Positions 4,981-61,802 of a stretch of DNA of 64,000 bases are shown here, piece by piece; the stretch's first letter is position 1; each line of letters begins with the position of its first letter. The stretch covers positions 154,382 to 218,381 of IMG/VR virus record IMGVR_UViG_3300031344_000002, one strand, 5' to 3'. The notes beneath the pieces were generated by a model. That model made no database searches. It was given only the letters and a program-made list of their open reading frames with translations, and was not told the DNA's origin. The translations under genes were made by a program, and so were the position numbers.

Positions 4981-6464
4981 TGAGCGAAGAATTAATAACA
5001 GATGATGATATTTTAAGTTTCTTAGATGAAGAACCTGAAGAAAAAGTAACGGATAATCAATTATTACTTTCTTCAGGTAAACTTATTACTTTCAATGACC
5101 AACAATTCGAAGCAATTAATAAAATTAAGAAATGGCTTAAAGAGAAAGATAAAACGTTCTTTACACTGGAAGGACAGGCTGGCAGTGGAAAATCGACAAT
5201 TATTAAAAAAATTTTGGATGATTATCGATATGGTGTTGTAGTGTCAGCACCCACGCACAAAGCTAGGAAGGTAATTGAGGATTTTACTGGAATACAAAGT
5301 AAAACTATTCATTCTTTGCTTGGATTAAAACCGGATTGTGAAATTGAGGCGTACAATCCTAACGACCCTAAATTTGCACCAATTGCCCCCTCAAGAATTA
5401 CGGAATATAATTGGGTCATTGTCGATGAAGCGTCACAAATAAATAATGAACTTTTTGAACTTATTAAAGAAAAAGTAAATGATAGTAGAACAAAAATATT
5501 ATTTATGGGAGATGCGTGTCAATGTCCGCCTGTTGGTGAAAAGATTTCGGTTATTTTTAATCAATTAGATATTGAAATTTTTACACTTAATAAAATTGAA
5601 AGACAAAATGTTGGAAATCCATTAATTTTATTATTTAATATATTAAGAAATAATTTAAGCTCAATTGATGGTGGATTTGAAAGAAAAACAAATGTAAATA
5701 AGAAAGGGGAGGGCATAATATTTACGGTTGATAAAAAAGAATTTCGTAAAGCAATGCTTGAGAAATTTTGTTCGGAAGAATTTCAAAAAAATGACGATTT
5801 TTGTAAAACGATTGCATGGAAAAATGATACAGTCATGGCATCAAATAAAATAATTAGAACAGCAATTTTTGGTAATAATACTGAAATTATTAATATTAAC
5901 GAATTATTATTTGGTTACAGAACCATAATGGATGAAAAACAAAGATATAATATTATTGAAAATTCTGCTGATTATCGGGTGGTTGAAAAATCAAATTTAG
6001 AAGAAAATGAATATGGTATAAATGGATATCGTGTAAAATTAAAAGAAGACCTTGCCAGAGGAAAATTTAAATTTCAAGATGTTTTTATTATAAATTCAAA
6101 TAATCATGAAAATTTACATCTTTATGCTCAAATGCATGATTTCTTTAGAGATATGGCAAAAAATAATAAAAAATTGTGGAATAAATATTATGAATTTCGT
6201 AGACAAAATTTATTAATGGAAACAATTGATAAACATCAAAATGGTCAACTTAGAAGTTCTAAAGATATTATCGTTAAAGACATTTCATATGGATATGCCA
6301 TTACGGGGCATAAGAGTCAGGGAAGCACATATAACACGGTTTTCGTTTTAGAATCTGACATAAAAGATAATTGGATGATTCGTGAGCGAAATCAAATTTT
6401 TTATGTAGCCGTAAGTCGTCCAACAACTTGTGCTTATGTCCTTTGTAATAGAATTGATAAATAA
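4980..6464 (+). CDS. SF1B helicase, T4 Dda/RecD-like
   Basis: Walker A GQAGSGKST, DEASQ, GDxxQCPPV, YAITGHKSQGSTY, YVAVSR. Confidence 0.9.
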   Translation: MSEELITDDDILSFLDEEPEEKVTDNQLLLSSGKLITFNDQQFEAINKIKKWLKEKDKTFFTLEGQAGSGKSTIIKKILDDYRYGVVVSAPTHKARKVIEDFTGIQSKTIHSLLGLKPDCEIEAYNPNDPKFAPIAPSRITEYNWVIVDEASQINNELFELIKEKVNDSRTKILFMGDACQCPPVGEKISVIFNQLDIEIFTLNKIERQNVGNPLILLFNILRNNLSSIDGGFERKTNVNKKGEGIIFTVDKKEFRKAMLEKFCSEEFQKNDDFCKTIAWKNDTVMASNKIIRTAIFGNNTEIININELLFGYRTIMDEKQRYNIIENSADYRVVEKSNLEENEYGINGYRVKLKEDLARGKFKFQDVFIINSNNHENLHLYAQMHDFFRDMAKNNKKLWNKYYEFRRQNLLMETIDKHQNGQLRSSKDIIVKDISYGYAITGHKSQGSTYNTVFVLESDIKDNWMIRERNQIFYVAVSRPTTCAYVLCNRIDK

Positions 6465-6553
6465 TTATAATTTTAGAAAAGTATTATAATTATGCAACAA
6501 TTTAAATATTTTTTCGTAATATTGCATAATATTTAATCTTAATTTAATGTATT

Positions 6554-6754
6554 ATGGATAAAACAATTGAATTAAATGGTGATATAATATCATCGGATGA
6601 ACATGTTTTTACAACCAATAATGGTTTAGTAAAAGCAAAAGAATTAAAAATTGATGATGAAATCATTGGTTTTGATGGAAACACCATAAAAATCACGAAA
6701 ATCATGAAATGTGGTAAAAGACCTGACGCACCAATTATTGGTAATACGATTTAA
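6554..6754 (+). CDS. Small stand-alone Hint/intein-like fragment
   Basis: SDEHVFTTNNGLVKAKELKIDDEI resembles intein block B and the following strand; no block A Cys or terminal HN. Confidence 0.45.
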   Translation: MDKTIELNGDIISSDEHVFTTNNGLVKAKELKIDDEIIGFDGNTIKITKIMKCGKRPDAPIIGNTI

Positions 6755-6775
6755 AAACATTAATTTAAAAATATC

Positions 6776-7039
6776 ATGGCAAAGAAAAAAACAAAATCAC
6801 TAGAATTACCCAAATATGTGAGTTTAAAAGGAGTTGCAATGCGTTTAACACCACATGAAGAACAGTATTATAGGCATGCTGGTCAATGGGGAGTTTATTA
6901 TAAAATAGTAGATGGAAAAGTATTTTCGAAATGTCCACACTTACCTTGGATACATAATGTTGAATTAATACCAATAACTGAAGAACAATGGAAAATTGAT
7001 AATCAAGGTTATTTACCTAATGACAAAGAGATTGAATAA
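6776..7039 (+). CDS. Hypothetical protein
   Basis: 87-aa ORF in operon context. Confidence 0.65.
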   Translation: MAKKKTKSLELPKYVSLKGVAMRLTPHEEQYYRHAGQWGVYYKIVDGKVFSKCPHLPWIHNVELIPITEEQWKIDNQGYLPNDKEIE

Positions 7040-7599: not shown

Positions 7600-8028
7600 A
7601 TGAAAAATAAAAATAATATAAAAGAAGACTCTTCAAAATATTTGATTATTTTGAGGGGTCTTCCTTAACTTGGTTCGGGAAAAAGTTCATTTGCAGAATT
7701 GTTAAATACTAAAGCTATTTGTTGTGCTGATGATTATATTACACGTAATGGTGTATATAATTGGAAACCTGAAACTGTAAATGCTTCACATGAATGGTGT
7801 CAGCGTAAATGCCGTAGATTCATGAAAATTGGCGTTGAACGTATTATTATTGCCAATACAAATACAAGAATGAAAGAAATGCAACCATATTTTGATATGG
7901 GAAAACAATTTGGGTATAAAATTTATTCGGTGATTATTGAAAACAGACATAATGGTACTAATAATCATAATGTACCAGAAAAAACAATTGAAAAGATGAT
8001 AAATCGTTTCGAGATGAAATTAAAATAA
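7600..8028 (+). pseudogene. P-loop kinase/ATPase (AAA_33/PNK-like) with an in-frame TAA inside Walker A
   Basis: Reads ILRGLP*LGSGKSS; removing 6 nt (TAACTT, 7666-7671) restores GLPGSGKS; continues in frame into ORF 7699..8028. Confidence 0.75.
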
Positions 8029-8262
8029 TGAATAGAATTGAAATTAAAACAATAATAAAACCTGAAACAGGAATTGAAATTGCAATTATAAATGATGCTG
8101 ATTTTATTATTGGTGCAAATTGGGGAAAAAGCAAATAGTCTTATTAATGGACTTTTAGTTGAAGGTTATTTAGACCTTTACGTAAAGTTTTTTCATTGTG
8201 ATAATGCAACTGGTGATAAATCACAAGAAAATTATGAATGGTTTAAAAATTTAATTAAATAA
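8028..8262 (+). pseudogene. Hypothetical gene with apparent 1-nt frameshift
   Basis: Frame stops at 8136-8138 just after GGGGAAAAA; the +1 frame stays open to TAA 8260-8262. Confidence 0.45.
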
Positions 8263-8268
8263 TTAATT

Positions 8269-9169
8269 ATGAAAACTGTAAAATTTGAAGAACAGAAAAA
8301 AGAAAAGATTTCAATATTAAGAAATGTTGAAGCAGGTAAAATAGTACGATTTGAACATATTTCTTATGAAGAAGCAATAAAAGATGATTTATTTTATTGT
8401 GTTGTTGGAAAACCTAAAGATAATAGGATTAAATTATTTTGCATAAGTAATGCAGAATTAATTGAAAGAGATGATGATTGGAGAGTGATTGAGCATGAAA
8501 GTAAATTATATGTTAAACCAAACATAATATAAATAAAAATGAGTGATAACTTAGAAAATAAAACTTTTTTTGAAGAATTAAAACAGCAACATATTAATGA
8601 TGGTGGTAAATGTCCAGAAGCATTTGCTATTACCGAATTAATTGAAAATGCAATTCGTAATAAAAATTATAAAATTTATTGTGGTGGTGGTGGTTACGAA
8701 TATAATACTGAAAACGAAATAAAAAAATTTGATATTGTTGTTTGGTTTAGTTGGGGTGGTGACCCTCATTTTCAGGTGTGCATAGATAATTCAGAAGGTG
8801 ATTCTTGTATTTTAATTAATTTTAATGATAAGGGTGAACTTGTTCAAACAATAAAATAATTATGAAAACATTCGTTGATTTTCTTAGAGAGGATGCCCCA
8901 ATTATAACATTTTTGTTTATTATGTTATTACTTCTTATTATTATAGGATTAAATGAATTTTCTTTTAAAAAGAAATAATTATGAAAACAATAACTATTTC
9001 ATTTGATATTAGTGTCCGCATTAAATGGAAATGTCCTCATTGTGGCGCAGAACAAGAAACATTATTTAGTGCTTCACCATATAGAAGTATTGCTGAAGAC
9101 CCGCCTGATGAAATGTGTAAAAAGTGTGAGGAATTTGTAACACTTAATTTTTATAAAAACGAAGAATAA
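8269..9169 (+). CDS. Small hypotheticals (8269..8532; 8539..8859; 8981..9169, the last with CPHC/CKKC zinc-ribbon)
   Basis: Packed co-oriented ORFs. Confidence 0.65.
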
Positions 9170-43646: not shown

Positions 43647-45965
43647 TTAAAATTCCATAACCACTTGTAAGATAGTAATTAACTTATCATCAAAATTTTC
43701 CATTCTATAAGGTAAATTAATATACTGTAAAACTTTTTCATTCTTTGCTTGTAATGCCAAAACTTCATCAATTTGTTTTTCCAATTTCTTTTGTGCTGCA
43801 GTTATTTTTATATTTGACAGGTCAAAATATGTAGATAAATATGGTTGAATATTAGCAATCTTATTTTCTCTACTTTTTGCAGGAATTGCAACAATACCAG
43901 CTTTAACATCATTGATTTTCTTACCCCATTTAGCATTTATCATAACAAATGATTTGTTGGTATATAATTCATGAATCTGATTGTATTTCTCAATAATCAT
44001 ATTGGTCTGAAAATACTGCATAATAGTATCAGATTTCCTATATAGTATCTTATTGAAGAAATCATCAACTTTATATGCTTTCTTGCAATATTGCATATAT
44101 TTAAGGTTATTTTCAGCCAATATAATGAACATTATACTTTTCTTACTTGCACCAGACCTTCTGTTTGAAAACTGATGGTCATAATCACTGTAATAAGTTA
44201 CCGGAATATCTTCACCAAATAATGTTGTGAATATTCTATATATTTCATGCAATTTGCTTTCATCAGCTTGATTACCATAGAAAATTGGACAATTATAATC
44301 AAAAAGACTTTCAAGTATAATTCTATATTTTGAATATCCACCTACGAACTTAACTGGAATGGTTGTATTGCGTAAGTCTTTGGACATTGAGTTTTTCTTC
44401 CTGTCAATCACAAAATCTTCTGGCACTTCCAATGTATCATAATTTTGTGCATGCTTACGTATAATCTCAAAATATTCTTCTTGCATTTCAAGTAATGATT
44501 GCATATAAGTTGTTGGTTTGCCTTTATCATCACATGTACTAGTAATTTGTGTATGAAAAAGGTCAGCAACATCATTTTGAATAAGTGAAGATGAATTACT
44601 AATGATATTGTTTTTTTCAATAATATGATATGTTTCGTACAAAGACTTTAAATATGCTTGCTTAACAATCTTGCGTACAAACATATCTTCAATATATAAT
44701 AAGTTTTTATTGTTATGTAATTCATCATAACCACCATCAAATCCATTACTAGTGCTGCTCCAACGACTTTTACGAGGTTTCTTACCATAAATACGAGATT
44801 TAAAAAAGAACTTGAATAAATGCTTATCAGAAGGCATTTTCATAAAACCATATTTGAAATTTGGAAAATCAACATCAGATTGTTTAATAAGTTTGCCAGT
44901 ATTAATACTACTACCATTACTAAAATTCAATACTCCAAAATTTTGTTTTACACTAAAGTATTCTTCTAATGTCTGGACATTCTGATATTGTTTTGAAATT
45001 AAAGCAATAATTTCTTTCTTAGCTGCTTCAAGTTTTTTCTTTAATATTTTAATCGTGTTCTCATCGTAATCCAGAGTTTCACGACTTATATTTACACCTA
45101 CTTCACCAACTTCAAGTTTTAATGCAATTGGAAGTTGATAATCACTTGAACTTAAATTAAGTATATTATAATCTATAGGATATGCAACTTTACCTAAACA
45201 TACATGCATGATAGTACCATAATCATCACCTCTGAATAAGAAAGATTTTCCACGAATGATTTGATATTTATTTGTCAGGGTTTTATCATAGCGAGTACTA
45301 TTATCATCATCTTCGTCAAATCCTTCGAAAACAACATTTTCAAAATAATAGAGTTGACGTACCATTTCTTTTGTAAATGTCTGCAGGTCTTTTTCTAATA
45401 CAGGTATACGAACTTCTGTGCCATTGTGTTCGTCAGTTTTCTCGCTGTGAAGTAATGATATTATAGGAGATTTTTTACTTTCATATATTTGATATGTATA
45501 TTTGATATTATCAAATATTGTAATAATAAAATAAGAATTATCATATTCACCTTCTCCAAAACCTGTGCTACGCTTGTAAGCCAGAGGACTCTTACTGCCT
45601 AACCCCCATTGACCGATTTGTTGAATATCTTCACGTTTTGTACTACTGAACATAACTGAAAATACATTATCAATTCTTTCTGTAGACATACCTACGCCAT
45701 AATCAATAAAAGAAACATAATAATTATTTGCTTGTTTATCAAAAATTTTCTTAATTATAACCGGAGTTTTAACACCAGCTTCAACATGACTATCAAAACA
45801 ATTTGAAGTTATTTCACGTACAACACTACCAATAGGATTGGTGTAAATGTTTTTTGAAAACATTTGAAAAATAATTGTTGCAGAATCTTTTGCTAATGTA
45901 ATATTCTTTTCTACTGTAGTTGTTTGTGTTTCAACATCTGAATAACTATTAACATTTAATTTCAT
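43647..45965 (-). CDS. rIIA: rIIA-like protein with N-terminal GHKL (HATPase_c) domain
   Basis: REITSNCFDSH, IDYGVGMS, STKR..IGQWGLGSKS, NGTEVRIPV; 772 aa, upstream of rIIB-like gene. Confidence 0.8.
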   Translation of the reverse strand: MKLNVNSYSDVETQTTTVEKNITLAKDSATIIFQMFSKNIYTNPIGSVVREITSNCFDSHVEAGVKTPVIIKKIFDKQANNYYVSFIDYGVGMSTERIDNVFSVMFSSTKREDIQQIGQWGLGSKSPLAYKRSTGFGEGEYDNSYFIITIFDNIKYTYQIYESKKSPIISLLHSEKTDEHNGTEVRIPVLEKDLQTFTKEMVRQLYYFENVVFEGFDEDDDNSTRYDKTLTNKYQIIRGKSFLFRGDDYGTIMHVCLGKVAYPIDYNILNLSSSDYQLPIALKLEVGEVGVNISRETLDYDENTIKILKKKLEAAKKEIIALISKQYQNVQTLEEYFSVKQNFGVLNFSNGSSINTGKLIKQSDVDFPNFKYGFMKMPSDKHLFKFFFKSRIYGKKPRKSRWSSTSNGFDGGYDELHNNKNLLYIEDMFVRKIVKQAYLKSLYETYHIIEKNNIISNSSSLIQNDVADLFHTQITSTCDDKGKPTTYMQSLLEMQEEYFEIIRKHAQNYDTLEVPEDFVIDRKKNSMSKDLRNTTIPVKFVGGYSKYRIILESLFDYNCPIFYGNQADESKLHEIYRIFTTLFGEDIPVTYYSDYDHQFSNRRSGASKKSIMFIILAENNLKYMQYCKKAYKVDDFFNKILYRKSDTIMQYFQTNMIIEKYNQIHELYTNKSFVMINAKWGKKINDVKAGIVAIPAKSRENKIANIQPYLSTYFDLSNIKITAAQKKLEKQIDEVLALQAKNEKVLQYINLPYRMENFDDKLITILQVVMEF

Positions 45966-48989: not shown

Positions 48990-50066
48990 TTATTTAAATA
49001 ATTTCATTAATTCGTCAATATTTTTTCTAGTTAGTTTTTGATTTTGATATTCTGAAATTACAATTTGTTCATTGGAAATAATAATATTACCATTATATTC
49101 TTTATTCAAATTCATTAATTGAATCATGGCTTTAAAATCTCCTAATGAAAATTCTTTACAACCAATTTTTACTCTATCATTTTCTTTATCATATATTGCT
49201 TTATATCCTTCAATAATAATTTCTGGTTCTTTTACGATTTCCGCCCATTTACCATTTAAATATATTGCAGGATTAGAACAAGAATCTTCCCATTCACTTT
49301 GTGGTACTTTCGTTCTTAAGACATTTTTAGAATAATAATAATCATAATAATCAAAATCACTATATTCTCCAATGGTATTAATAAAATCATGCCCATCAAT
49401 GTTTTTAAATCTAGTTCCTACTTTAAATCCTTTGTGCTTTGCTACAATAATTAGAAATTCTTCTACTTGTTTAGGTGTTGCTTTAACTATAGAACCAAAA
49501 TAATCATCATTTTCTAAAACATGGTCATATTGGTCATCTATAACATCACCATCTTTTATTTGATATAATTCAGAATAATGATAGTGATTATTTTCAAATT
49601 TTTTGAATTTAAACAAGACTTTATTAACATTATCACCTTTCCAACTACAGTATAACCATTCTCCGAGTTGATATTGATGTGCTGTTTCACTTTTTTTATT
49701 AATTTTGTAATCAAATTCGTTTAATTTTTTAAGAAGTTCGACTTTTAAATTTTCAAATTCTTGTTTAATGTTATTGTTTTTCATATCAATTTTATTAGTT
49801 TTTATGACAATATTTCTCGATTCTTCTTTTAAAAATTCATTAAATGATAAAATAATACAACGAGTATAATCAGTTATATCATAACTACGAGAAAATCTAT
49901 CGGAATATTCGACATAAATATCTCTATCATCACACCAATATTCTTCCAATAAATTGGTGGGTTTATCGCCACTGTACCATTTCCAACCTTTCTTTTCAAA
50001 TATTTCCAAAACTTTATTAAATTCTTCTCGTGTTTTACAACATATTACTTTTCTTTTATTTTCCAT
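48990..50066 (-). CDS. Modular hypothetical protein, 358 aa
   Basis: C-terminal module shared with 25949..27079. Confidence 0.75.
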   Translation of the reverse strand: MENKRKVICCKTREEFNKVLEIFEKKGWKWYSGDKPTNLLEEYWCDDRDIYVEYSDRFSRSYDITDYTRCIILSFNEFLKEESRNIVIKTNKIDMKNNNIKQEFENLKVELLKKLNEFDYKINKKSETAHQYQLGEWLYCSWKGDNVNKVLFKFKKFENNHYHYSELYQIKDGDVIDDQYDHVLENDDYFGSIVKATPKQVEEFLIIVAKHKGFKVGTRFKNIDGHDFINTIGEYSDFDYYDYYYSKNVLRTKVPQSEWEDSCSNPAIYLNGKWAEIVKEPEIIIEGYKAIYDKENDRVKIGCKEFSLGDFKAMIQLMNLNKEYNGNIIISNEQIVISEYQNQKLTRKNIDELMKLFK

Positions 50067-50512
50067 GACGTTATTTATTGTTGTTAATTAATACGAATAT
50101 TAATTAAATTTGTTACACTTAATTGCTTATTTTTTCTTTAATCTTTATTTCTTTACCATCTAGTTTTTCAATAGCAATATTTTTTAATAGTTCATCATGA
50201 CAATTATTATATTCTAAAGGACGAAATCGTTCACTTTTAAAAGAATAATGTGTTGGTGGTGAAATATTGGAAAAACAAAATCTACAAATAGCAATATCGC
50301 TTGTAAATTTTTTACTGATTGAATAAAATATAAGTCCGGTTACACCACAACTGGAACAAGCATACATTTCATCAATAACATATATTTCATTTAATTTTAA
50401 TTCCGGTACACCTGAATTATCAATACATACAACTTTTTGCCCAATTTTAAACATAACTATTTATTTTTTTATTAATATTAAAATCTAAAAAATAGATTAC
50501 AAAGATAATGCA

Positions 50513-50935
50513 TTATTTATCACTTTTCCAAAATAATTTAGATTTAAGCATATTCATATCTGCAATATTTATTGCTTCTGTTATGTTATTATTTATATAA
50601 GCTACTCCAACACATACTTTTTCATTAAGACAAATCATATTAAATTCATTCGAAAAGAGTATAAATTCATCACCAGCATATCTTACAAAAATATCATTTT
50701 CTCCTAATTGAACTGAATTAACAATATTTTTTATATATTCATCACCAGCAGTATGACCGTTCTCATTTATTTTACGTAAATCATTAATATCTATGAAATA
50801 GACATAATTGGTTTTAATTTGGTCAATATTTTTATATAACCAATTTCTATTTAATAAACCAGTTAAAGAATCGTGATACGCTAAGTATTTTAATTCTCTA
50901 TATTCTTTTACTATTTTTCTAATTCTGGAAAACAT
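50513..50935 (-). CDS. Stand-alone GGDEF-domain protein (AGDEF active-site variant)
   Basis: AYHDSLTGLLNR, FIDINDLRKINE.GHTAGDEYI, VRYAGDEF. Confidence 0.85.
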   Translation of the reverse strand: MFSRIRKIVKEYRELKYLAYHDSLTGLLNRNWLYKNIDQIKTNYVYFIDINDLRKINENGHTAGDEYIKNIVNSVQLGENDIFVRYAGDEFILFSNEFNMICLNEKVCVGVAYINNNITEAINIADMNMLKSKLFWKSDK

Positions 50936-51193
50936 AATTTAAATTCTTTAATTGTTAAATGAGTCCACCAATTATTAATATTATCATTATTAAACATCAC
51001 TGCAATATGGTTTACTTTTGGTCGGCATGGTATATTATCCGCTTTACACCAACCAATAGCATATTTTCTTATAATATTTTTATTTAAAACAATTAATTCA
51101 GTTCTGTGTGGTATTCTTAAATTATTAATAATACTTCCACTTCTCCAAGTCAACCAATCAAAAGATTGCTCATTAAAATGTTCAATATAAATA

Positions 51194-52180
51194 TTATTCA
51201 TGTAATTCACGATATTTATTATTATGTGAAATGCAAACATCAAGGCAATTTTTACGGCATATATCATCTTTATAGCAATCATGGTTTTTAAACCATTCTA
51301 AGCGTTCTAGTCTCATATTTTCTGAAATCCTACCGATTGGCTCACCCTTTTCTCTCATGTAAATAACACAAGGAAAATGATAATCTCCGGCAATAACAGA
51401 ATCATCTAAAACTATTGCACATTTATTATAATCACTTTCACACATTCCTCTCACATTTTTGCCATTAGCAAAATTATTTATTCTATATTTCAAAATAGGA
51501 TGCGCATTAATTATTCCTTCTTCAACTTCATTAAGTCTTGGTATTGGTATATTCCACTGAGCAGCAGAAATAATACGAATATCTGCCACACCCAATTTAT
51601 GGGCAAATCTTATCGTTTCAATAGTTTTATCAATATTTTCTGGAGTTAATACAACACCAACAGTAACATAAGTTAATTTGGATATTGCTTTAATATTATC
51701 AACTACTTTAAACCAAGAATCCTTAATACCACCAGCCATTTTATCGCCATCATCAGCACAACAAGCATCTAATGATATTGAGAAATCATTACAACCAGCA
51801 TTAATAAGTGCCATATATAATTCAATTTTATTTGAACCATTAGTTGATATTGCAATTCTATTTATACCTTTATATTTAGCATAAGTAATTATTTCCACAA
51901 TATTTTTATGTAATGTTGGTTCACCGCCAGAAAATCTTATATTTTCTAATGGAATATCTTTACACCACAAATCAATATTATGTTTAATTTCTTCTAATGA
52001 AAGTTCTTTAATTTTTCTCTGTCCATATATTTCAGCTTTTAAACCTCTACAATAATTACAACGAAAATTACAATATTCGGTTATAATCATTTCACATCTT
52101 TTCATTTGAGATGTTATTGATACATTTCTCACTCTTTCATCAGATAATGTATAAAACCCAATTTCTTTTAAATTCATCAT
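51194..52180 (-). CDS. Radical SAM protein with Cys-rich C-terminus
   Basis: CNFRCNYC, IRFSGGEPTLH, ISTNGS; distal C...PC...C...C..VC. Confidence 0.9.
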   Translation of the reverse strand: MMNLKEIGFYTLSDERVRNVSITSQMKRCEMIITEYCNFRCNYCRGLKAEIYGQRKIKELSLEEIKHNIDLWCKDIPLENIRFSGGEPTLHKNIVEIITYAKYKGINRIAISTNGSNKIELYMALINAGCNDFSISLDACCADDGDKMAGGIKDSWFKVVDNIKAISKLTYVTVGVVLTPENIDKTIETIRFAHKLGVADIRIISAAQWNIPIPRLNEVEEGIINAHPILKYRINNFANGKNVRGMCESDYNKCAIVLDDSVIAGDYHFPCVIYMREKGEPIGRISENMRLERLEWFKNHDCYKDDICRKNCLDVCISHNNKYRELHE

Positions 52181-52485
52181 AATATATTTAAAGTTTCAAT
52201 AATTCCTTCAGTTAAAGCTGATTCAAAAGTATAATGTAAACCAACTTTATCATCTAATTCTGGGTATTCAATTACACCCCAGATGTACCCATTACCTATC
52301 TTTTCGTTTGTAGTGTACATACAATTAAGATGAATATTTTTATCATTCCTTAACCAACGTTTAATGAACGATAATGCCAGTAAATTTAAATCATCGTCAT
52401 TACAAAAATCAAATACAGGTAATTTCATTCCCTTGCTAGAAGCAAGATTGAGTAAATCATGAGAAAGTTTAATAAGATTTTCCAT
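52177..52485 (-). CDS. Distant fifth member of the 41.7-43.2 kb paralog family
   Basis: LA..KG...FIKRWLRNDKNIH...FESALTEGIIETL. Confidence 0.5.
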   Translation of the reverse strand: MENLIKLSHDLLNLASSKGMKLPVFDFCNDDDLNLLALSFIKRWLRNDKNIHLNCMYTTNEKIGNGYIWGVIEYPELDDKVGLHYTFESALTEGIIETLNIL

Positions 52486-52594
52486 GTGTAATGATTATAT
52501 GTTTTAATTATAATACGAAAATTATTAAATTTTGTTGCAAATATATAAAAATAATTTAAATAATAGTGGTTAAATCTAAATATTTATATTATAT

Positions 52595-55339
52595 TTGCAG
52601 AAGAAAATAAAAACTATGAAAACGAATAACGAAATTGTTACTATTAAACTAAATGATACGGTAAAAACAAAACATGGTATTGGTCTTGTTGTAGATGTTA
52701 TAGAATGGAACGATGGTATTACAAATCATATTGAATATGATGTTGAAACTCAGATTGGTAGTTATAGATTAATGAGAAGCGAAATTGAAAAATAAATTAA
52801 AATAATAAAATTAAATTATGGAAAATGAAACAAAAACTAACATACCTGATGGGTTTGAATTTGTTAACCCATGACCCTGTGGAAACTAATCTAAATTTGA
52901 AGTGTTTAATACCACAAATTTGTTCGGTTATACTTCCTAAATCCGTGGAACTAAAATAATTAAAAATAAATTATATATGGAAAAAGAAGATTTAATACTA
53001 TGTGAATGTGGTTCTCCTGAACATCAAATTATTATTCAAAAGGACGAAGAATTTAAAGACAGAATGATTTATTTGCAAATTCATTTAAGAACTTACAACA
53101 ATTTCTTTAAAAGAATTTGGATTGCAACTAAATACATCTTTGGTTATAAGTGTAGATATGGAAATTGGGATGAATTTATTCTCACAACAAATAATTATCA
53201 ACCAATGAAAAATGCTATTGAATTTTTAGAAAACGATATAAACAAAAATGAAAACGATATTTAAAACAATCATAAAAAATGCACTATTAATAATTATGGC
53301 TATCGTAACAACAATAGGACTGTTATCAACAGGATATTTTTTAATTTTTATTGAGTGTAAAATATATACCCTAATAAGTTTTATTATTACTTGTGCTGCC
53401 ATATCAGTAATGGAATACATTAATTTCGATAATAAAGAAAAAATCTTTAAAAAATTTTAAATTATGAAAGCAGAAGATATATTAAAAATTGACTGGAAAA
53501 CCACATCGTTAATAGCTATTGATGAATGTAGAATGGGATGTGATGGAAGACCAACATTAACCATTGGTCGTTCTTATCATCCAACTCATTATAATACAAG
53601 CTGGATAAGAATTTTTGATGATTATAATGAAGAACATCATTTCGAATATGATACACTTCAAAATTATTTTAAAATTGTGGCTAATGAAAATTTAGAAAAC
53701 ATATGTACGGCAAGTAAAATTAATGTATTAGAAAACCTAAAATGTGCTGTAGGATTTGATGCAAACAATACTTATCCCGCATTATTTCAACACTTAGGTT
53801 ATAGAAAATTAATTGCCGAACAACTATTAAGAGGTGGTGAAACAAATAAAATGAAAGAACTTGAAGAATTGTATGAACAAGTCAATATTAAAATAAAATT
53901 AATACTAGGACTACTATAATATGAATGTTGATAAAGTAAATATAAAAGATTGCCATCAGAATGCTTGCGCAAATTTCTTAATTGAAGAACATACGATTGG
54001 TGATTTAAGAGATGAAGCAGATTTTGATAATGTAGTTTATCATGCAAAAAAATCATTAATGTTTGCAAAAGACTTAATATTAAATATTGATGGAACTAAT
54101 GAGGAAAAGGCAAAATTTATTGATGATGTAATTCTGGATTATGATAAGTTTAAAGTAAATGGGCAAAGTAAAGAAGAAGTTTGTCCTAACTGTGGTTCAA
54201 AATTAAAACCTTCAATGTATGCATATATAAACGTTCAGTGTACAAAATGCGATTATAAAAGATAAAATTATGAAAGTAAATATAAATGAAATAATTGAAT
54301 GTGGTCATAAATTATATTATGACATCAATCCAAATAGTGAAATGGATGTGCCTTCTATGTTCTATGAACGATTAGAAAAAGAATGGGTAAAATGGAAAGA
54401 AAGTGGAAGCGAATTATCATTCTATGAATATTGTAAGCACAGCATATCTGATGTTGATGATTCATTACCTACTGATATTGAAATGGACGAACAAATTTTA
54501 AAAATAATGAATGAAAATTTGGTTGCTGGTACTGTTGCTGAAAATACAGAAGGAATTATTTGTAATAAATTTGCTACATCATTAAAAATTGTTCATTACA
54601 TAAAAGAATTAATGAAAAAATAAATAATAATAATATGGATATTAAAGAACCAGATTTAACGGCTGGCGGTATGGCATAGTTATTTTTTCTATCACAAAAC
54701 TAAATTAAAAGATATGGCTTACGATATTTATGGACAAAACTTAGCGAGCGGACACTGTGAGGTACATCCGTGGGTTGCGGAAAGTTATCCGTGCAGTTTA
54801 TGTTATGCAGAAAGCAAACCTAAACACGACCCAAGACAAAAGGAGTATGAACGTGCGGAGGCAGAACACTACGCTGAAATGGAGCGAGCGCACTACGAAG
54901 AACTGGCAAGAAAAAATAATTTGCTATACCGCTTGTTATGCTATGTGGCACTTGCAGTAAGTAAATTAAACGAGCGAGTTCAAAAATATAAGGAAAAAAT
55001 GTTAAGCAGAACGGTTGGTAGATTAATTCATAAACAATGATAAAAGAAGAAAAATCAACACAAGAAATAACAATTCATCACAAATATTGTGATGATTGCG
55101 GAGTGGAAATAAAGCGTGGTATGGCTTGTTCTGCTGCAAAGTGTGAGATGTGTGGTAAGGACTTGTGTGATAAGTGTGTTGAACATGAAGATAATGGCTC
55201 TGGTGATTACAGAATCGTTTATTGTTCTAGGTGTTGGCGTATTGGTCTCGAATATTTTGAAAAAATAAAAATATATGTAGATGAAATAGAAAATTTAAAT
55301 ACTGAATGGTTAAGAAAATGCCTTGATAAACAAGTGTAA
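52595..55339 (+). CDS. Plus-strand island of small hypotheticals (52595, 52977, 53248, 53464, 53921, 54270, 54714, 55037 Cys-rich)
   Basis: Co-oriented ORFs after TATATTTG box 52590-52597, divergent from the 52.5 kb promoter. Confidence 0.7.
52818..52959 (+). pseudogene. Internally deleted paralog of 367..780 retaining start region and repeat-spacer-partial repeat
   Basis: MENETKTNIPDGFEF (cf. MENKEIKINVPDGFEI), TGA at 52872-52874, then in the +1 frame VETNLNLKCLIP-QICSVILPKS-VELK*. Confidence 0.8.
52878..52950 (+). CRISPR. Degenerate repeat + 30-bp spacer + truncated repeat
   Basis: TGTGGAAACTAATCTAAATTTGAAGTGTTTAATACC (52878-52913) is 30/36 identical to the array repeat; exactly 30 bp later (52944) comes CGTGGAA. 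Confidence 0.7.
54655..54941. repeat. attC-like imperfect inverted arms
   Basis: TTTAACGGCTGGCGGTATGGCATAGTTATTT (54655-54685) vs AAATAATTTGCTATACCGCTTGTTATGC (54914-54941). Confidence 0.5.
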
Positions 55340-60563: not shown

Positions 60564-61802
60564 ATGATTAAAGCATATAAATATCGAATCATGCCAACTA
60601 AGGCACAACAAACACTAATCAATAAACATATTGGTAGTTGTCGATTTGTATATAATCTTGCTTTAGAAACCAAACAAATTGCTTATGCGGGTAATAAAAT
60701 TAATTTATCTTGTTTTGACCTAATTAAACAACTTCCTGCTTTAAAAAAAGAATGTGAATGGTTAAAAGAAATTAATGCACAATCATTGCAACAATCAATA
60801 ACACATTTAGATAATGCTTTTACTCGATTCTTCAAAGGACAATCAGATTTTCCTAATTTTAAAAAGAAATGTGCTAAACAATCATTTAATATACCACAAA
60901 GTGTAATTCTTGATTTTGATAATAATAAACTTATCATACCCAAATTTAGAAAAGGAATTAAAATAATTTTACATAGAACTTTTAAAGGTACTATCAGACA
61001 AGCAACTATAAGCAAAACTCCAACAGGTAAATATTTTGTAAGTATATTAGTTGAAAATAATGTTGTGATACCAAATAAAGTAAATATTGAAAGTAATAAT
61101 AGTATTGGTATTGATTTAGGTCTTAAATCATTCTTAATAACTTCTGAAGGTGAGACATTTAATAATCCCAAATATTTAAGAAAATCACAATCTAAATTAA
61201 AATATATACAAAGTAAATATTCAAAATATAAAGGCAAAAAAACAAAACATAAATTAGCTCTTTTGCATGAAAGTGTTGCTAATCAAAGAAAAGATTTTTT
61301 AAATAAAATATCAATTAAACTTATTAGTGAGAACCAAACAATATGTTTAGAAGACTTGAATATTAAAGGTATGTCAGCAAGATGTAAACCAAAACAAGAC
61401 GAAAATGGTAGATATTTACCTAACAGTCAAAGTGCAAAATCAGGACTTAATAAGTCTATAACTGATGCTGGTTGGGGTATGTTTGTTGATATGCTTAAAT
61501 ATAAAGCAGAATGGCAAGGTAAAAACATATTACAAATTGGTAGATTTGAACCATCAAGTAAAACTTGTAATGTTTGTGGCAATATTAATAAAGAGTTAAC
61601 TCTTGATAATAGAGTTTGGACTTGTAGTAATTGTAATACTGTTCTTGATAGAGATGTTAATGCAGCAATTAATATTAAAAATTTTGCTTTAAGAAATTAC
61701 ATTAAATTGTGTAAGGAACTTACACTTGAAAATCATAGCGAACTGCCTACATTAGTGGGAGTGATGACCTATGAAGCCAACAAGTCTTTAGCTTGTAGGT
61801 AG
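60564..61802 (+). CDS. tnpB: RNA-guided endonuclease TnpB (IS200/IS605 family)
   Basis: HTH_OrfB start (KAYKYRI.PT..Q...I....G.CRFVYN); RuvC D (GIDLG), E (LEDL), D (DRDVNAA); zinc finger CNVC/CSNC. Confidence 0.95.
   Translation: MIKAYKYRIMPTKAQQTLINKHIGSCRFVYNLALETKQIAYAGNKINLSCFDLIKQLPALKKECEWLKEINAQSLQQSITHLDNAFTRFFKGQSDFPNFKKKCAKQSFNIPQSVILDFDNNKLIIPKFRKGIKIILHRTFKGTIRQATISKTPTGKYFVSILVENNVVIPNKVNIESNNSIGIDLGLKSFLITSEGETFNNPKYLRKSQSKLKYIQSKYSKYKGKKTKHKLALLHESVANQRKDFLNKISIKLISENQTICLEDLNIKGMSARCKPKQDENGRYLPNSQSAKSGLNKSITDAGWGMFVDMLKYKAEWQGKNILQIGRFEPSSKTCNVCGNINKELTLDNRVWTCSNCNTVLDRDVNAAINIKNFALRNYIKLCKELTLENHSELPTLVGVMTYEANKSLACR

What the first reader, a model, noticed from the sequence alone, without database searches (positions are those of the whole stretch)
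50513..50935. Phage-encoded minimal diguanylate-cyclase-like protein in a probable Bacteroidota phage
Seen: 140 aa, short N-terminal helix, DxLTGLxNR, metal-binding D, and AGDEF; the C-terminal part looks shortened. Established: AGDEF variants can be active; many Bacteroidota lack GGDEF signalling, and their CBASS STING receptors sense c-di-GMP. Inference: the phage could make c-di-GMP or a decoy dinucleotide, drain GTP, or bind nucleotide signals, thereby manipulating immunity, motility or receptor display.
Basis: partly seen in the sequence, partly recalled or inferred. Interest (0 to 1): 0.6.

Follow-up and report, generated by a model that had tools for sequence, protein, structure and literature searches.

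The report
Huge-phage mini GGDEF cyclase with radical-SAM partner
A large tailed phage carries a stripped-down 140-residue version of the bacterial enzyme that makes the signal c-di-GMP, and across many related phages this gene stays next to a radical-SAM enzyme and a small unknown protein, pointing to an undescribed phage pathway for a guanine-nucleotide product.

Summary
ORF 50513-50935 (-) encodes a 140-aa GGDEF-domain protein (Pfam E=3e-12), modelled at pLDDT 92.8, and its best structural matches are all diguanylate cyclases. Every residue needed to bind GTP/Mg and to catalyse is invariant or nearly so in 42 relatives. The motif is AGDEF in 41 of 42. The domain is cut down: helix alpha3 (about 24 aa) and the last strand are missing, there is no RxxD inhibitory site, and no sensor domain.

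It is not a recent capture. At least 269 relatives of 133-150 aa were found, on phage-like contigs up to 540 kb.

In 20 of 21 distinct related contigs a radical-SAM gene lies within about 6 kb upstream on the same strand, and usually a conserved ~90-aa unknown protein overlaps the GGDEF start codon. The flanking genes are not conserved.

The radical-SAM enzyme folds most like nucleoside- and nucleotide-tailoring enzymes (BlsE, DesII, MoaA, viperin). It also occurs without the GGDEF gene, whereas the GGDEF gene almost never occurs without it.

Best reading: an unregulated GTP-using cyclase that serves a radical-SAM nucleotide pathway. A Bacteroidota host is plausible but unproven. Activity, product and dimerisation are untested.

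The parts
50513..50935 (-). Mini GGDEF (AGDEF) protein, 140 aa. Predicted elements: N-terminal amphipathic helix (aa 2-20), DSLTGLLNR (aa 22-30, nt 50846-50872), metal-binding D49 (nt 50789-50791), guanine contacts N57 and D65, AGDEF (aa 87-91, nt 50663-50677), phosphate-binding K133 (nt 50537-50539).
   Evidence: ORF. Pfam GGDEF E=3.2e-12. AF2 model pLDDT 92.8. Foldseek top hits are all diguanylate cyclases, TMq 0.6-0.77. Residue conservation in 42 relatives. Alignment to 4urs.
50911..51201 (-). Small conserved protein of unknown function. The conserved part is about 90 aa. The longest ORF runs to 51282, but the conserved part and the relatives point to the start at M28 (nt 51201). Its end overlaps the GGDEF start by 25 nt.
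   Evidence: Homologues lie directly upstream of GGDEF, overlapping its start, in about half of the related loci at 32-69% identity. In L018 it lies upstream of the radical-SAM gene instead. No Pfam, PHROG, NCBIfam, PADLOC or Atlas match.
51194..52180 (-). Radical-SAM enzyme, 328 aa. CxxxCxxC at C37/C41/C44, a GGEP motif, and five invariant C-terminal cysteines (C254, C271, C308, C312, C316), from which an auxiliary Fe-S cluster is inferred.
   Evidence: Pfam Radical_SAM E=2e-24. Best NCBIfam hit is MoaA, 89 bits, far below its cut-off of 284. Model pLDDT 86.9. Best folds are BlsE, DesII, MoaA, AbmM and viperin. Conserved at 60-90% identity in thousands of metagenomic proteins. It is the only radical-SAM gene in the 218-kb record.
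52177..52485 (-). First ORF of the leftward gene block (102 aa). Its stop overlaps the radical-SAM start by 4 nt. It is not conserved in related loci.
   Evidence: No tblastn match in any related locus. No family match.
52486..52594 (.). Divergent intergenic region upstream of the cassette. It holds one TAnnTTTG word on each strand (52538-52545 on -, 52590-52597 on +). It is the likely promoter region for the cassette, but this is unproven.
   Evidence: Sequence. Motif positions, where the motif is not enriched in the window overall (132 found against 139 expected). No terminator-like site lies inside 49900-52800.
50119..50454 (-). Downstream Cys-rich 111-aa ORF, 58 nt after the GGDEF stop. 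It is a neighbour only and is not conserved with the cassette.
   Evidence: No match in related loci. No family match.

Best explanation
The gene encodes a streamlined, stand-alone GGDEF-family nucleotide cyclase. Inferred mechanism: two copies pair through the short N-terminal amphipathic helix, each binds one GTP-Mg, and together they condense the two GTP into pppGpG and then c-di-GMP. With no RxxD I-site, no helix alpha3 and no sensor domain, the enzyme would be constitutive and insensitive to its own product.

It does not act alone. It is the accessory member of a conserved phage cassette: radical-SAM enzyme, then a ~90-aa unknown protein, then the mini-GGDEF. The radical-SAM enzyme resembles enzymes that tailor nucleosides, nucleotides and nucleotide-sugars.

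The most likely logic is that the cyclase either supplies a guanine dinucleotide on which the radical-SAM enzyme acts, or processes that enzyme's GTP-derived product. Either way the phage would make a guanine-nucleotide-derived small molecule during infection.

Shown here: family membership, fold, residue conservation and gene linkage. Inferred: enzyme activity, dimerisation, the product, and the order of the steps.
For: GGDEF identity:
- Pfam and NCBIfam hits.
- Profile match to the T. maritima cyclase 4urs, E=1.8e-16.
- Model pLDDT 92.8, and Foldseek hits are exclusively diguanylate cyclases.

Active-site conservation in 42 relatives at 59% mean identity:
- D49, N51, N57, R85, Y86, G88, D89, E90, F91 and K133 are 42/42.
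- D65 is 41/42.
- K/R137 is 37/42.
- N57 and D65 correspond to the guanine-binding N335 and D344 of PleD; K133 corresponds to the Lys of the YxAK motif.

Linkage to the radical-SAM gene:
- It lies upstream on the same strand within about 6 kb in 20 of 21 distinct GGDEF contigs. The two genes often abut or overlap, or have the small ORF between them.
- Gene order is permuted in L018, and insertions of 0.5-6 kb are tolerated in some loci.
- The flanking window genes (orf102, orf111, orf358) have no match in any related locus.
- In L002-L004 a GGDEF 60% identical to the window's abuts a radical-SAM only 28% identical. That GGDEF is not an outlier in the GGDEF tree, though the tree is poorly resolved.

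Asymmetry of occurrence: the radical-SAM gene occurs without any GGDEF in 9 IMG/VR records, including a complete 82-kb phage, and in the 735-kb phage LR756501. The reverse is almost never seen.

Radical-SAM fold: the best matches are BlsE (TMq 0.65), DesII, MoaA, AbmM and viperin.

Support for dimerisation comes from relatives: one is a tandem of two mini-GGDEFs in a single chain (P0254), and others carry long N-terminal coiled coils (P0361, P0269).
Against: - No biochemical data exist.
- AGDEF domains are inactive in some proteins, for example NbdA.
- Loss of alpha3 and of the last strand could impair catalysis.
- Gene linkage among related phages could be partly inherited synteny.
- The radical-SAM enzyme works without a phage GGDEF in some phages, so the two need not share a pathway.
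- The radical-SAM substrate is unknown; structural similarity to peptide-modifying SPASM/twitch enzymes (SkfB, CteB, SuiB) is nearly as strong.
- No c-di-GMP receptor, phosphodiesterase or riboswitch was found in the 218-kb record, which is 66% complete.
Confidence: 0.5

Rival explanations
1. An autonomous, always-on diguanylate cyclase whose only job is to flood the host with c-di-GMP. That could alter motility, surface polysaccharide or receptor display, or exclude other phages. The radical-SAM neighbour would be unrelated and kept nearby only by shared ancestry.
For: The active site is intact and no I-site is present. Small stand-alone GGDEF proteins with no radical-SAM neighbour exist in cultured Bordetella and Pseudomonas siphophages; the FP1 protein also reads AGDEF. 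Lysogens of those Bordetella phages overproduce biofilm (PMC8471281). Phages are known to raise host c-di-GMP through the YfiN-binding peptide Yip (PMC8085984). In L014/L015 the two genes are about 6 kb apart, with glycosyltransferase, ClpB-like and other genes in between.
Against: The linkage survives rearrangement, insertion, a change of gene order and replacement by a 28%-identical radical-SAM gene, while the flanking genes turn over. If the host is a Bacteroidota bacterium without c-di-GMP signalling, few host targets would exist; 141 of 301 sampled genomes and 5 of 5 TnpB-sharing genomes have no GGDEF domain. Where a c-di-GMP-sensing TIR-STING system is present, the product would trigger abortive infection (established knowledge, cited in PMC13725321).
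Confidence: 0.25
2. A non-catalytic GGDEF domain that binds GTP or a dinucleotide and acts as a regulatory or substrate-delivery subunit of the radical-SAM enzyme.
For: The motif is degenerate in its first glycine (AGDEF, 41/42). The fold is truncated. It depends strictly on the presence of the radical-SAM gene, but not the other way round. Many degenerate GGDEF domains are receptors (general knowledge; an example is GdpX6, PMC7996900, listed).
Against: All catalytic residues (D49, D89, E90, K133) are invariant, which binding alone would not require. The usual c-di-GMP binding site of GGDEF receptors (RxxD) is absent. A relative is a tandem of two domains, as expected for a head-to-head catalytic pair.
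Confidence: 0.12
3. A cyclase or nucleotidyltransferase with a different product. It could condense a radical-SAM-modified GTP, or make a mixed or linear dinucleotide that serves as a decoy or competitor for host immune signalling, or it could simply drain GTP.
For: The partner fold class includes MoaA and viperin, which act on GTP or CTP. Minimal palm-domain cyclases that make unusual dinucleotides exist: mCpol/OptS makes 2',3'-c-di-AMP (PMC12657218). With no product inhibition, high flux would be possible.
Against: The guanine-specific N57 and D65 are conserved, and there is no Ser of the Hypr type. A 3'-deoxy product of the viperin type could not be cyclised. Nothing in the locus identifies an immune target.
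Confidence: 0.1
4. A decaying fragment of a captured bacterial GGDEF gene, with no function.
For: It is short, it matches only the first 92 of 161 Pfam positions, and the motif is a variant.
Against: There are 269 or more full-length relatives of the same size, with invariant catalytic residues. 16 clusters at 50% identity score E<=1e-30. The compact fold is modelled with high confidence. Near-identical DNA occurs in independent rhizosphere, pond and viral-fraction samples.
Confidence: 0.02

Closest known systems
Canonical GGDEF diguanylate cyclases (PleD, WspR, T. maritima TM1788/tDGC, SiaD, DgcB)
   Same: Same Pfam family and palm-like fold. It has the DxLTGLxNR lead-in, the metal-binding Asp, the guanine-binding Asn and Asp, the [AG]GDEF hairpin and the phosphate-binding Lys. 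An N-terminal helix sits where SiaD, WspR and DgcB have their dimerising stalk.
   Different: Only 140 aa. Helix alpha1 is shortened. Helix alpha3 (about 24 aa) and the last strand are absent. There is no RxxD I-site and no sensor or receiver domain. The motif is AGDEF. It is phage-encoded and linked to a radical-SAM gene.
VCA0965 of Vibrio cholerae (an AGDEF diguanylate cyclase shown to be active; PMC3974145)
   Same: AGDEF in place of GGDEF, with the other catalytic residues kept.
   Different: VCA0965 is a full-length bacterial signalling protein. No close sequence relation was tested here.
Small GGDEF proteins of cultured phages (Bordetella phages FP1, CN1 and LK3, Yuavirus Pseudomonas phages, Bacillus phage G gp350, Bacillus phage SP-15, Clostridium phage Clo-PEP-1)
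   Same: Phage-encoded GGDEF proteins that are short or have a single domain. The FP1 protein is 156 aa, 32% identical over residues 1-93, and also reads AGDEF. They are annotated as cyclases, and hyper-biofilm in lysogens has been reported (PMC8471281).
   Different: Only the N-terminal half aligns. No radical-SAM neighbour is annotated in the FP1 stretch shown. They are smaller phages of Proteobacteria and Firmicutes. None has been characterised biochemically in the literature searched.
mCpol/OptS of the Panoptes defence system (PMC12657218)
   Same: A minimal palm-domain nucleotide cyclase with no regulatory domains that constitutively makes a cyclic dinucleotide.
   Different: A bacterial defence gene. 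It largely lacks the GGDEF motif, makes 2',3'-c-di-AMP, and is paired with a membrane effector. The protein here is a true PF00990 member and is phage-encoded.
Nucleoside- and nucleotide-tailoring radical-SAM enzymes (BlsE, DesII, MoaA, AbmM, viperin/pVip), for the neighbouring gene
   Same: CxxxCxxC core and overall fold: BlsE TMq 0.65, MoaA profile E=5e-12 over residues 30-194, partial hits to pVip models.
   Different: It falls far below every curated family cut-off (MoaA 89 against 284 bits, viperin 54 against 180). The C-terminal Cys-rich domain is its own. The substrate is unknown.

Membership tests
GGDEF domain / diguanylate cyclase (PF00990) | Profile match above the curated threshold | tested here: met
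   Pfam 47 bits against a cut-off of 23.8, E=3.2e-12. TIGR00254 45.7 bits against 37.4. Only profile positions 1-92 of 161 align.
GGDEF domain / diguanylate cyclase (PF00990) | GG[DE]EF signature hairpin | tested here: inconclusive
   AGDEF is present. A87 is 41/42; G88, D89, E90 and F91 are 42/42. The first Gly is replaced. This variant is active in VCA0965 but inactive in NbdA.
GGDEF domain / diguanylate cyclase (PF00990) | Metal-binding and catalytic acidic residues (PleD D327, E370/E371) | tested here: met
   D49, D89 and E90 are invariant in 42 relatives. Correspondence is by the alignment to 4urs and by the motif.
GGDEF domain / diguanylate cyclase (PF00990) | Guanine-recognising Asn and Asp (PleD N335, D344) | tested here: met
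   N57 is 42/42 and D65 is 41/42.
GGDEF domain / diguanylate cyclase (PF00990) | Phosphate-binding Lys/Arg of the last helix (YxAKxxGR) | tested here: met
   K133 is 42/42 and aligns with K178 of 4urs. K/R137 is 37/42.
GGDEF domain / diguanylate cyclase (PF00990) | Complete domain fold, including helix alpha3 and the terminal strand | tested here: not met
   The model has a loop at residues 96-106 in place of alpha3 and ends in a helix. About 24 residues are missing relative to 4urs.
GGDEF domain / diguanylate cyclase (PF00990) | Dimer of two GGDEF domains, needed for catalysis | tested here: inconclusive
   Indirect evidence only. There is an amphipathic N-terminal helix. One relative is a tandem of two domains, and other relatives have long coiled coils.
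GGDEF domain / diguanylate cyclase (PF00990) | Synthesis of c-di-GMP from GTP | not testable with these tools
   Needs an enzyme assay.
GGDEF domain / diguanylate cyclase (PF00990) | RxxD allosteric I-site (common but not obligatory) | tested here: not met
   The Arg position is a gap in 21 of 42 sequences and is never Arg among the residues tabulated there. The Asp position is G in 22 and D in 15.
Hypr GGDEF (cGAMP-producing) | Ser in place of the guanine-specific Asp (PleD D344) | tested here: not met
   D65 is conserved in 41/42.
mCpol / Panoptes OptS | Palm domain without the GGDEF motif, in an operon with the membrane effector OptE | tested here: not met
   A true PF00990 match with DxLTGLxNR and AGDEF. 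The neighbours are a radical-SAM enzyme and a small protein of unknown function. There is no PADLOC hit; that library dates from 2023 and may predate Panoptes.
MoaA, GTP 3',8-cyclase (neighbouring radical-SAM gene) | Equivalog-level profile score over the full length | tested here: not met
   TIGR02666 gives 89 bits against a cut-off of 284, covering only residues 31-205. The PDB profile match also covers the core only.
Viperin / pVip (neighbouring radical-SAM gene) | Equivalog-level profile score | tested here: not met
   NF038283 gives 53.7 bits against a cut-off of 180. The PADLOC pVip models match only the N-terminal core. Foldseek TMq is 0.42.

The most novel reading that the evidence does not exclude
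The radical-SAM, small-protein and mini-GGDEF cassette is a self-contained phage pathway. It would make a radical-SAM-modified guanine dinucleotide, or consume phage-made c-di-GMP. This would be a previously unknown virus-made nucleotide signal or anti-defence molecule. The phage would carry its own cyclase because its (probably Bacteroidota) hosts often lack c-di-GMP synthesis, while related phages of other hosts carry the radical-SAM enzyme alone.
Probability: 0.22. Interest if true: 0.85.

Novelty: new variant of a known kind. Interest (0 to 1): 0.62.

Why it matters
Nucleotide second messengers are central to phage-bacterium conflict. So far phages are known mainly to degrade or sequester them, not to make them.

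- A widespread, constitutive, minimal cyclase in huge phages, tied to a radical-SAM enzyme of the nucleotide-tailoring kind, would be a concrete and easily cloned candidate (140 aa + 328 aa + ~90 aa) for virus-made signalling or decoy nucleotides.
- It also defines what may be the smallest natural GGDEF catalytic core, with no alpha3 and no I-site. That is useful for understanding what the fold needs, and as a product-insensitive enzyme for synthesis.
- If the host is a Bacteroidota bacterium, it bears on why that phylum has so little c-di-GMP signalling and uses c-di-GMP for STING-based defence.

Tried and rejected
- Homodimer prediction of the GGDEF protein (two copies): score 0.01, no verdict. 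It is not used as evidence either way.
- c-di-GMP machinery elsewhere in the 218-kb record: no EAL, PilZ or HD-GYP domain, no c-di-GMP-I or -II riboswitch, and no Rfam family in the window. The record is only 66% complete, so absence is not shown.
- Bacteroidota promoter word TAnnTTTG: not enriched in the window (132 found against 139 expected).
- Sigma-70-like sites are no more frequent than in shuffles, and no terminator-like site was found.
- T9SS C-terminal sorting domain, Terminase_6N and Gp23 Pfam models: no hit in the record. The Gp23 control rang nowhere, so that result is uninformative.
- The small protein: no hit in Pfam, PHROGs, NCBIfam or PADLOC. The Atlas feature hits scored 0.79, which is chance level.
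- My guess that a 162-aa ORF downstream of the radical-SAM gene in L043 is a CYTH enzyme was not supported by Pfam and is dropped.
- Contexts of the more distant mini-GGDEFs P0254, P0361 and P0273: the contigs were too short or uninformative.
- P0383, a single ORF joining radical-SAM residues 1-149 to GGDEF residues 37-end, looks like a deletion or an assembly chimera. It is not counted as a domain fusion.
- Expression: a peat metatranscriptome holds only short, diverged pieces of orf111, the radical-SAM gene and orf102, and nothing useful over GGDEF. DNA carry-over cannot be excluded. Transcription is therefore not shown.
- The GGDEF tree is largely unresolved: 12 of 18 inner branches are open. 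It shows only that the L002 copy is not an outlier.
- GC content does not separate GGDEF-carrying loci from radical-SAM-only loci.
- Literature: no paper in the searched library describes a radical-SAM/GGDEF phage cassette or a biochemically characterised phage diguanylate cyclase.
- No alternative genetic code was needed. ORFs are dense under table 11.
Full report
**1. The observation**

The minus-strand ORF 50513..50935 encodes 140 aa. By direct reading and by translation it contains DSLTGLLNR (aa 22-30), FIDIND (D49) and RYAGDEF (aa 85-91).

Pfam GGDEF matches at E=3.2e-12, but only over profile positions 1-92 of 161. NCBIfam gives the same picture.

An AlphaFold2 model built on 42 relatives is confident (pLDDT 92.8). 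Its elements in order are:
- helix 2-20
- helix 30-39
- strand 44-50
- helix 61-74
- the hairpin 82-87 / 90-95 that carries AGDEF
- a loop 96-106
- strand 107-113
- a final helix 118-139

Foldseek against the PDB returns only diguanylate cyclases: SiaD, T. maritima tDGC, WspR, DgcB, PleD and DgcR, with TMq 0.6-0.77.

A profile alignment to 4urs shows where the protein is shorter than a normal domain. It lacks about 8 residues in helix alpha1, one residue before the GH motif, and about 24 residues after the GGDEF strand, which is helix alpha3. The strand that normally follows the last helix is absent as well.

**2. It is a conserved family, not a fragment**

The word-based search found 269 proteins of 133-150 aa, the best at 55-68% identity over the full length. 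They sit on contigs of up to 501 and 540 kb.

That search cannot see longer or shorter kin, so I also ran the exhaustive profile search. It found 16 clusters (at 50% identity) at E<=1e-30 and 2,719 at E<=1e-10. Many further proteins of 135-190 aa match the whole short profile. Ordinary long GGDEF proteins match only its first 100 positions.

In the 42-sequence alignment (mean identity 59%) the conservation is as follows:
- Invariant: D22, L24, T25, N29, R30, D49, N51, N57, G60, H61, G64, R85, Y86, G88, D89, E90, F91, G110, K133.
- D65 is 41/42, A87 is 41/42, K/R137 is 37/42.

By motif, and by the alignment, these are the metal-binding and catalytic acids, the guanine-binding Asn and Asp, and the phosphate-binding Lys of known cyclases. 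The RxxD inhibitory site is absent: the Arg column is a gap in half of the sequences and is never Arg among the residues tabulated.

Taken together, this is a cyclase that kept its chemistry and lost its regulation.

AGDEF is active in V. cholerae VCA0965 (PMC3974145) but inactive in NbdA, so the motif alone does not decide activity.

Relatives bear on dimerisation:
- P0254 is a tandem of two such mini-domains in one chain.
- P0361 and P0269 carry long N-terminal coiled coils.
- The window protein's N-terminal helix is amphipathic and conserved.

**3. Context: the main new result**

The window is the last 64 kb of a 218-kb IMG/VR virus record that is 66% complete. The record carries tail sheath, baseplate wedge, DNA polymerase and SbcC-like genes. 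The window also has an rIIA-like gene and many small ORFs.

The GGDEF gene lies near the start of a leftward gene block. That block starts at a divergent intergenic region (52486-52594) and runs as follows:
- orf102 (52177..52485)
- radical-SAM gene (51194..52180)
- small ORF (50911..51201/51282)
- GGDEF gene

The successive genes overlap by 4, 8 (or 89) and 25 nt. No terminator-like site lies inside the block.

In related loci from ENA, JGI and IMG/VR, the radical-SAM gene lies upstream on the same strand in 20 of 21 distinct GGDEF contigs. The one remaining contig ends before the place where the gene would be expected. The arrangement varies:
- The two genes abut or overlap in L002-4, L007, L013, L016, L027, L028 and L037.
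- They have the small ORF between them, overlapping the GGDEF start, in L005/6, L008, L011/12 and L039/40/51.
- They are separated by 0.5-6 kb of inserted genes in L009, L017, L019-L024 and L015/L033.
- In L018 the order is small ORF, radical-SAM, GGDEF.

None of the window's flanking genes (orf102, orf111, orf358) has a match in any other locus. The trio is therefore kept together while its surroundings change.

Three further observations bear on the linkage:
- At least 19 GGDEF hits share their longest-contig length with radical-SAM hits. Some of these contigs are only 1.6-2.3 kb, so the two genes must be adjacent there.
- The record holds exactly one GGDEF and one radical-SAM gene, and they are neighbours.
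- In L002-L004 (a 209-kb contig with very different neighbours) the GGDEF is 60% identical to the window's, but the abutting radical-SAM is only 28% identical over its core. That GGDEF copy is not an outlier in the tree, which is poorly resolved. The pairing has thus been kept or re-created with a different member of the same enzyme class.

The relation is asymmetric. Nine IMG/VR records carry the radical-SAM gene (60-71% identity) and no GGDEF anywhere. One of them is a complete 82-kb genome with terminal repeats. The 735-kb phage LR756501 also has the radical-SAM gene (63% identity) and no GGDEF.

**4. The partners**

The radical-SAM protein is very conserved: 77% mean identity in 23 sequences, and 3,557 hits. 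It has the CxxxCxxC cluster site and five invariant C-terminal cysteines.

- Sequence profiles place only its core near MoaA, far below any family cut-off.
- Its model (pLDDT 86.9) is most like BlsE (TMq 0.65), then DesII, MoaA, AbmM, the peptide maturases SkfB, CteB and SuiB, and viperin.
- PADLOC's pVip models match the core only.

A nucleoside or nucleotide(-sugar) substrate is the most economical inference, but it is not shown.

The small protein is a real conserved family with no detectable relatives of known function. Its conserved blocks are WLTWR-GS, IRxYAIG, CRPK, AVMF and WTHLTxKEFxxCFPEL.

**5. Host**

The evidence favours a Bacteroidota host but does not prove one.
- 12 of 18 relatives of the window's TnpB gene (60564..61802) lie in MAG contigs assigned to Bacteroidota: Flavobacterium, Tenacibaculum, Vicingus, Ekhidna, Rudanella, Sediminibacterium, Chitinophagales and Bacteroidales. 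The two best hits, however, are in bins labelled Paceibacterota and Hyphomicrobium, and misbinned phage contigs are possible.
- The related phage L002 encodes a T9SS-associated domain protein.
- The radical-SAM gene is shared with the 735-kb Mahaphage, which its authors predicted to replicate in Bacteroidetes (PMC7162821).
- GC content is about 26%.
- The phage DNA occurs in rhizosphere, pond and viral-fraction metagenomes from several studies.

- 141 of 301 sampled Bacteroidota genomes have no GGDEF domain, and most of the rest have one.
- None of 5 Bacteroidota genomes that share the TnpB gene has a GGDEF domain.

The literature states that c-di-GMP signalling is rare in this phylum because it interferes with c-di-GMP-based CBASS/STING defence (PMC13725321, citing Morehouse 2020).

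**6. Mechanism and rivals**

The best-supported reading has two parts. First, the protein is a GTP-specific, constitutive cyclase that is insensitive to its product. Second, it functions with the radical-SAM enzyme, either by feeding it a guanine dinucleotide or by condensing its product.

The asymmetry of occurrence fits an accessory, substrate-supplying role, needed where the host provides no c-di-GMP. That last step is speculation.

The rivals are:
- an autonomous cyclase that manipulates the host, as is assumed for the small GGDEF proteins of Bordetella and Pseudomonas siphophages (one of which, from FP1, also reads AGDEF)
- a non-catalytic nucleotide-binding subunit
- a different product
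- a dead fragment, which is excluded

**7. Novelty**

Phage GGDEF genes are already annotated in cultured phages and have been discussed (PMC8471281). Phages are also known to manipulate host c-di-GMP (PMC8085984).

I found no description of three things:
- this alpha3-less family
- its spread in huge phages
- its cassette with a radical-SAM enzyme

I file it as a new variant of a known kind. The cassette may turn out to be a new pathway.

Noticed in passing
L047 7001-8884 (= L010); also L048 (= L024) and L049: The cassette's radical-SAM gene is split after about residue 208 by a 0.8-0.9 kb insertion. In L047 the insertion encodes a free-standing GIY-YIG/NUMOD3 homing endonuclease (7695..8477), which leaves two ORFs (aa 1-208 and aa 215-328). 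Rfam finds no group I intron there.
   Followed up: partly
window 60564-61802 (+): A TnpB/IS605 OrfB-type gene (HTH_OrfB_IS605, OrfB_IS605 and Cas12f1-like TNB domains) sits inside the phage. Its relatives at 50-76% identity are mostly on contigs of Bacteroidota MAGs.
   Followed up: partly
window 43647-45965 (-): A 772-aa rIIA-like protein (PHROG 612, E=1e-58, with a weak HATPase_c match) lies in the same leftward block of small genes as the cassette.
   Followed up: no
P0254 (locus L081 1314-2291); P0383: One relative is a tandem duplication of two mini-GGDEF domains in a 325-aa chain. Another ORF joins radical-SAM residues 1-149 directly to GGDEF residues 37-end; it is probably a deletion or an assembly chimera.
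   Followed up: partly
L085 (LR756501.1, 735,411 bp) 6001-6963; G310 (81.9 kb, terminal repeats): The same radical-SAM family (63% identity) is present in the largest published phage genome and in a complete 82-kb phage. Neither has any GGDEF domain.
   Followed up: yes
L014 5019-7103: In one lineage the mini-GGDEF gene is flanked by a glycosyltransferase-like gene (324 aa) and a Sir2-family gene (231 aa, Pfam E=2e-35). A ClpB-like ATPase lies upstream. The radical-SAM gene is about 6 kb away.
   Followed up: partly
L002 1107-4498 and 6589-12423: The related 209-kb phage contig carries two sigma-70-family factors, a class II tRNA-synthetase-like gene, a GIY-YIG/NUMOD3 endonuclease and a 1063-aa protein with a T9SS-associated domain around the cassette.
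   Followed up: no
L084 (Bordetella phage FP1) 2989-3459: The 156-aa GGDEF protein of a cultured siphophage also has AGDEF (RIAGDEF) and a shortened first helix. It is 32% identical to the window protein over residues 1-93. This may be a broader phage-type mini-GGDEF group.
   Followed up: partly
window 1-64000: GC skew changes sign near 36 kb, again near 52 kb, and again near 56 kb. These points coincide with switches in coding strand. GC stays at 22-30% throughout. There is no tRNA in the window, and one tRNA-Met in the whole record at 61392-61480 (record coordinates).
   Followed up: no
window 50162-50346, 51521-51640, 52277-52429: A peat metatranscriptome run holds short contigs matching orf111, part of the radical-SAM gene and orf102 (2-18 differences each), but nothing useful over the GGDEF gene. 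DNA carry-over cannot be excluded.
   Followed up: partly
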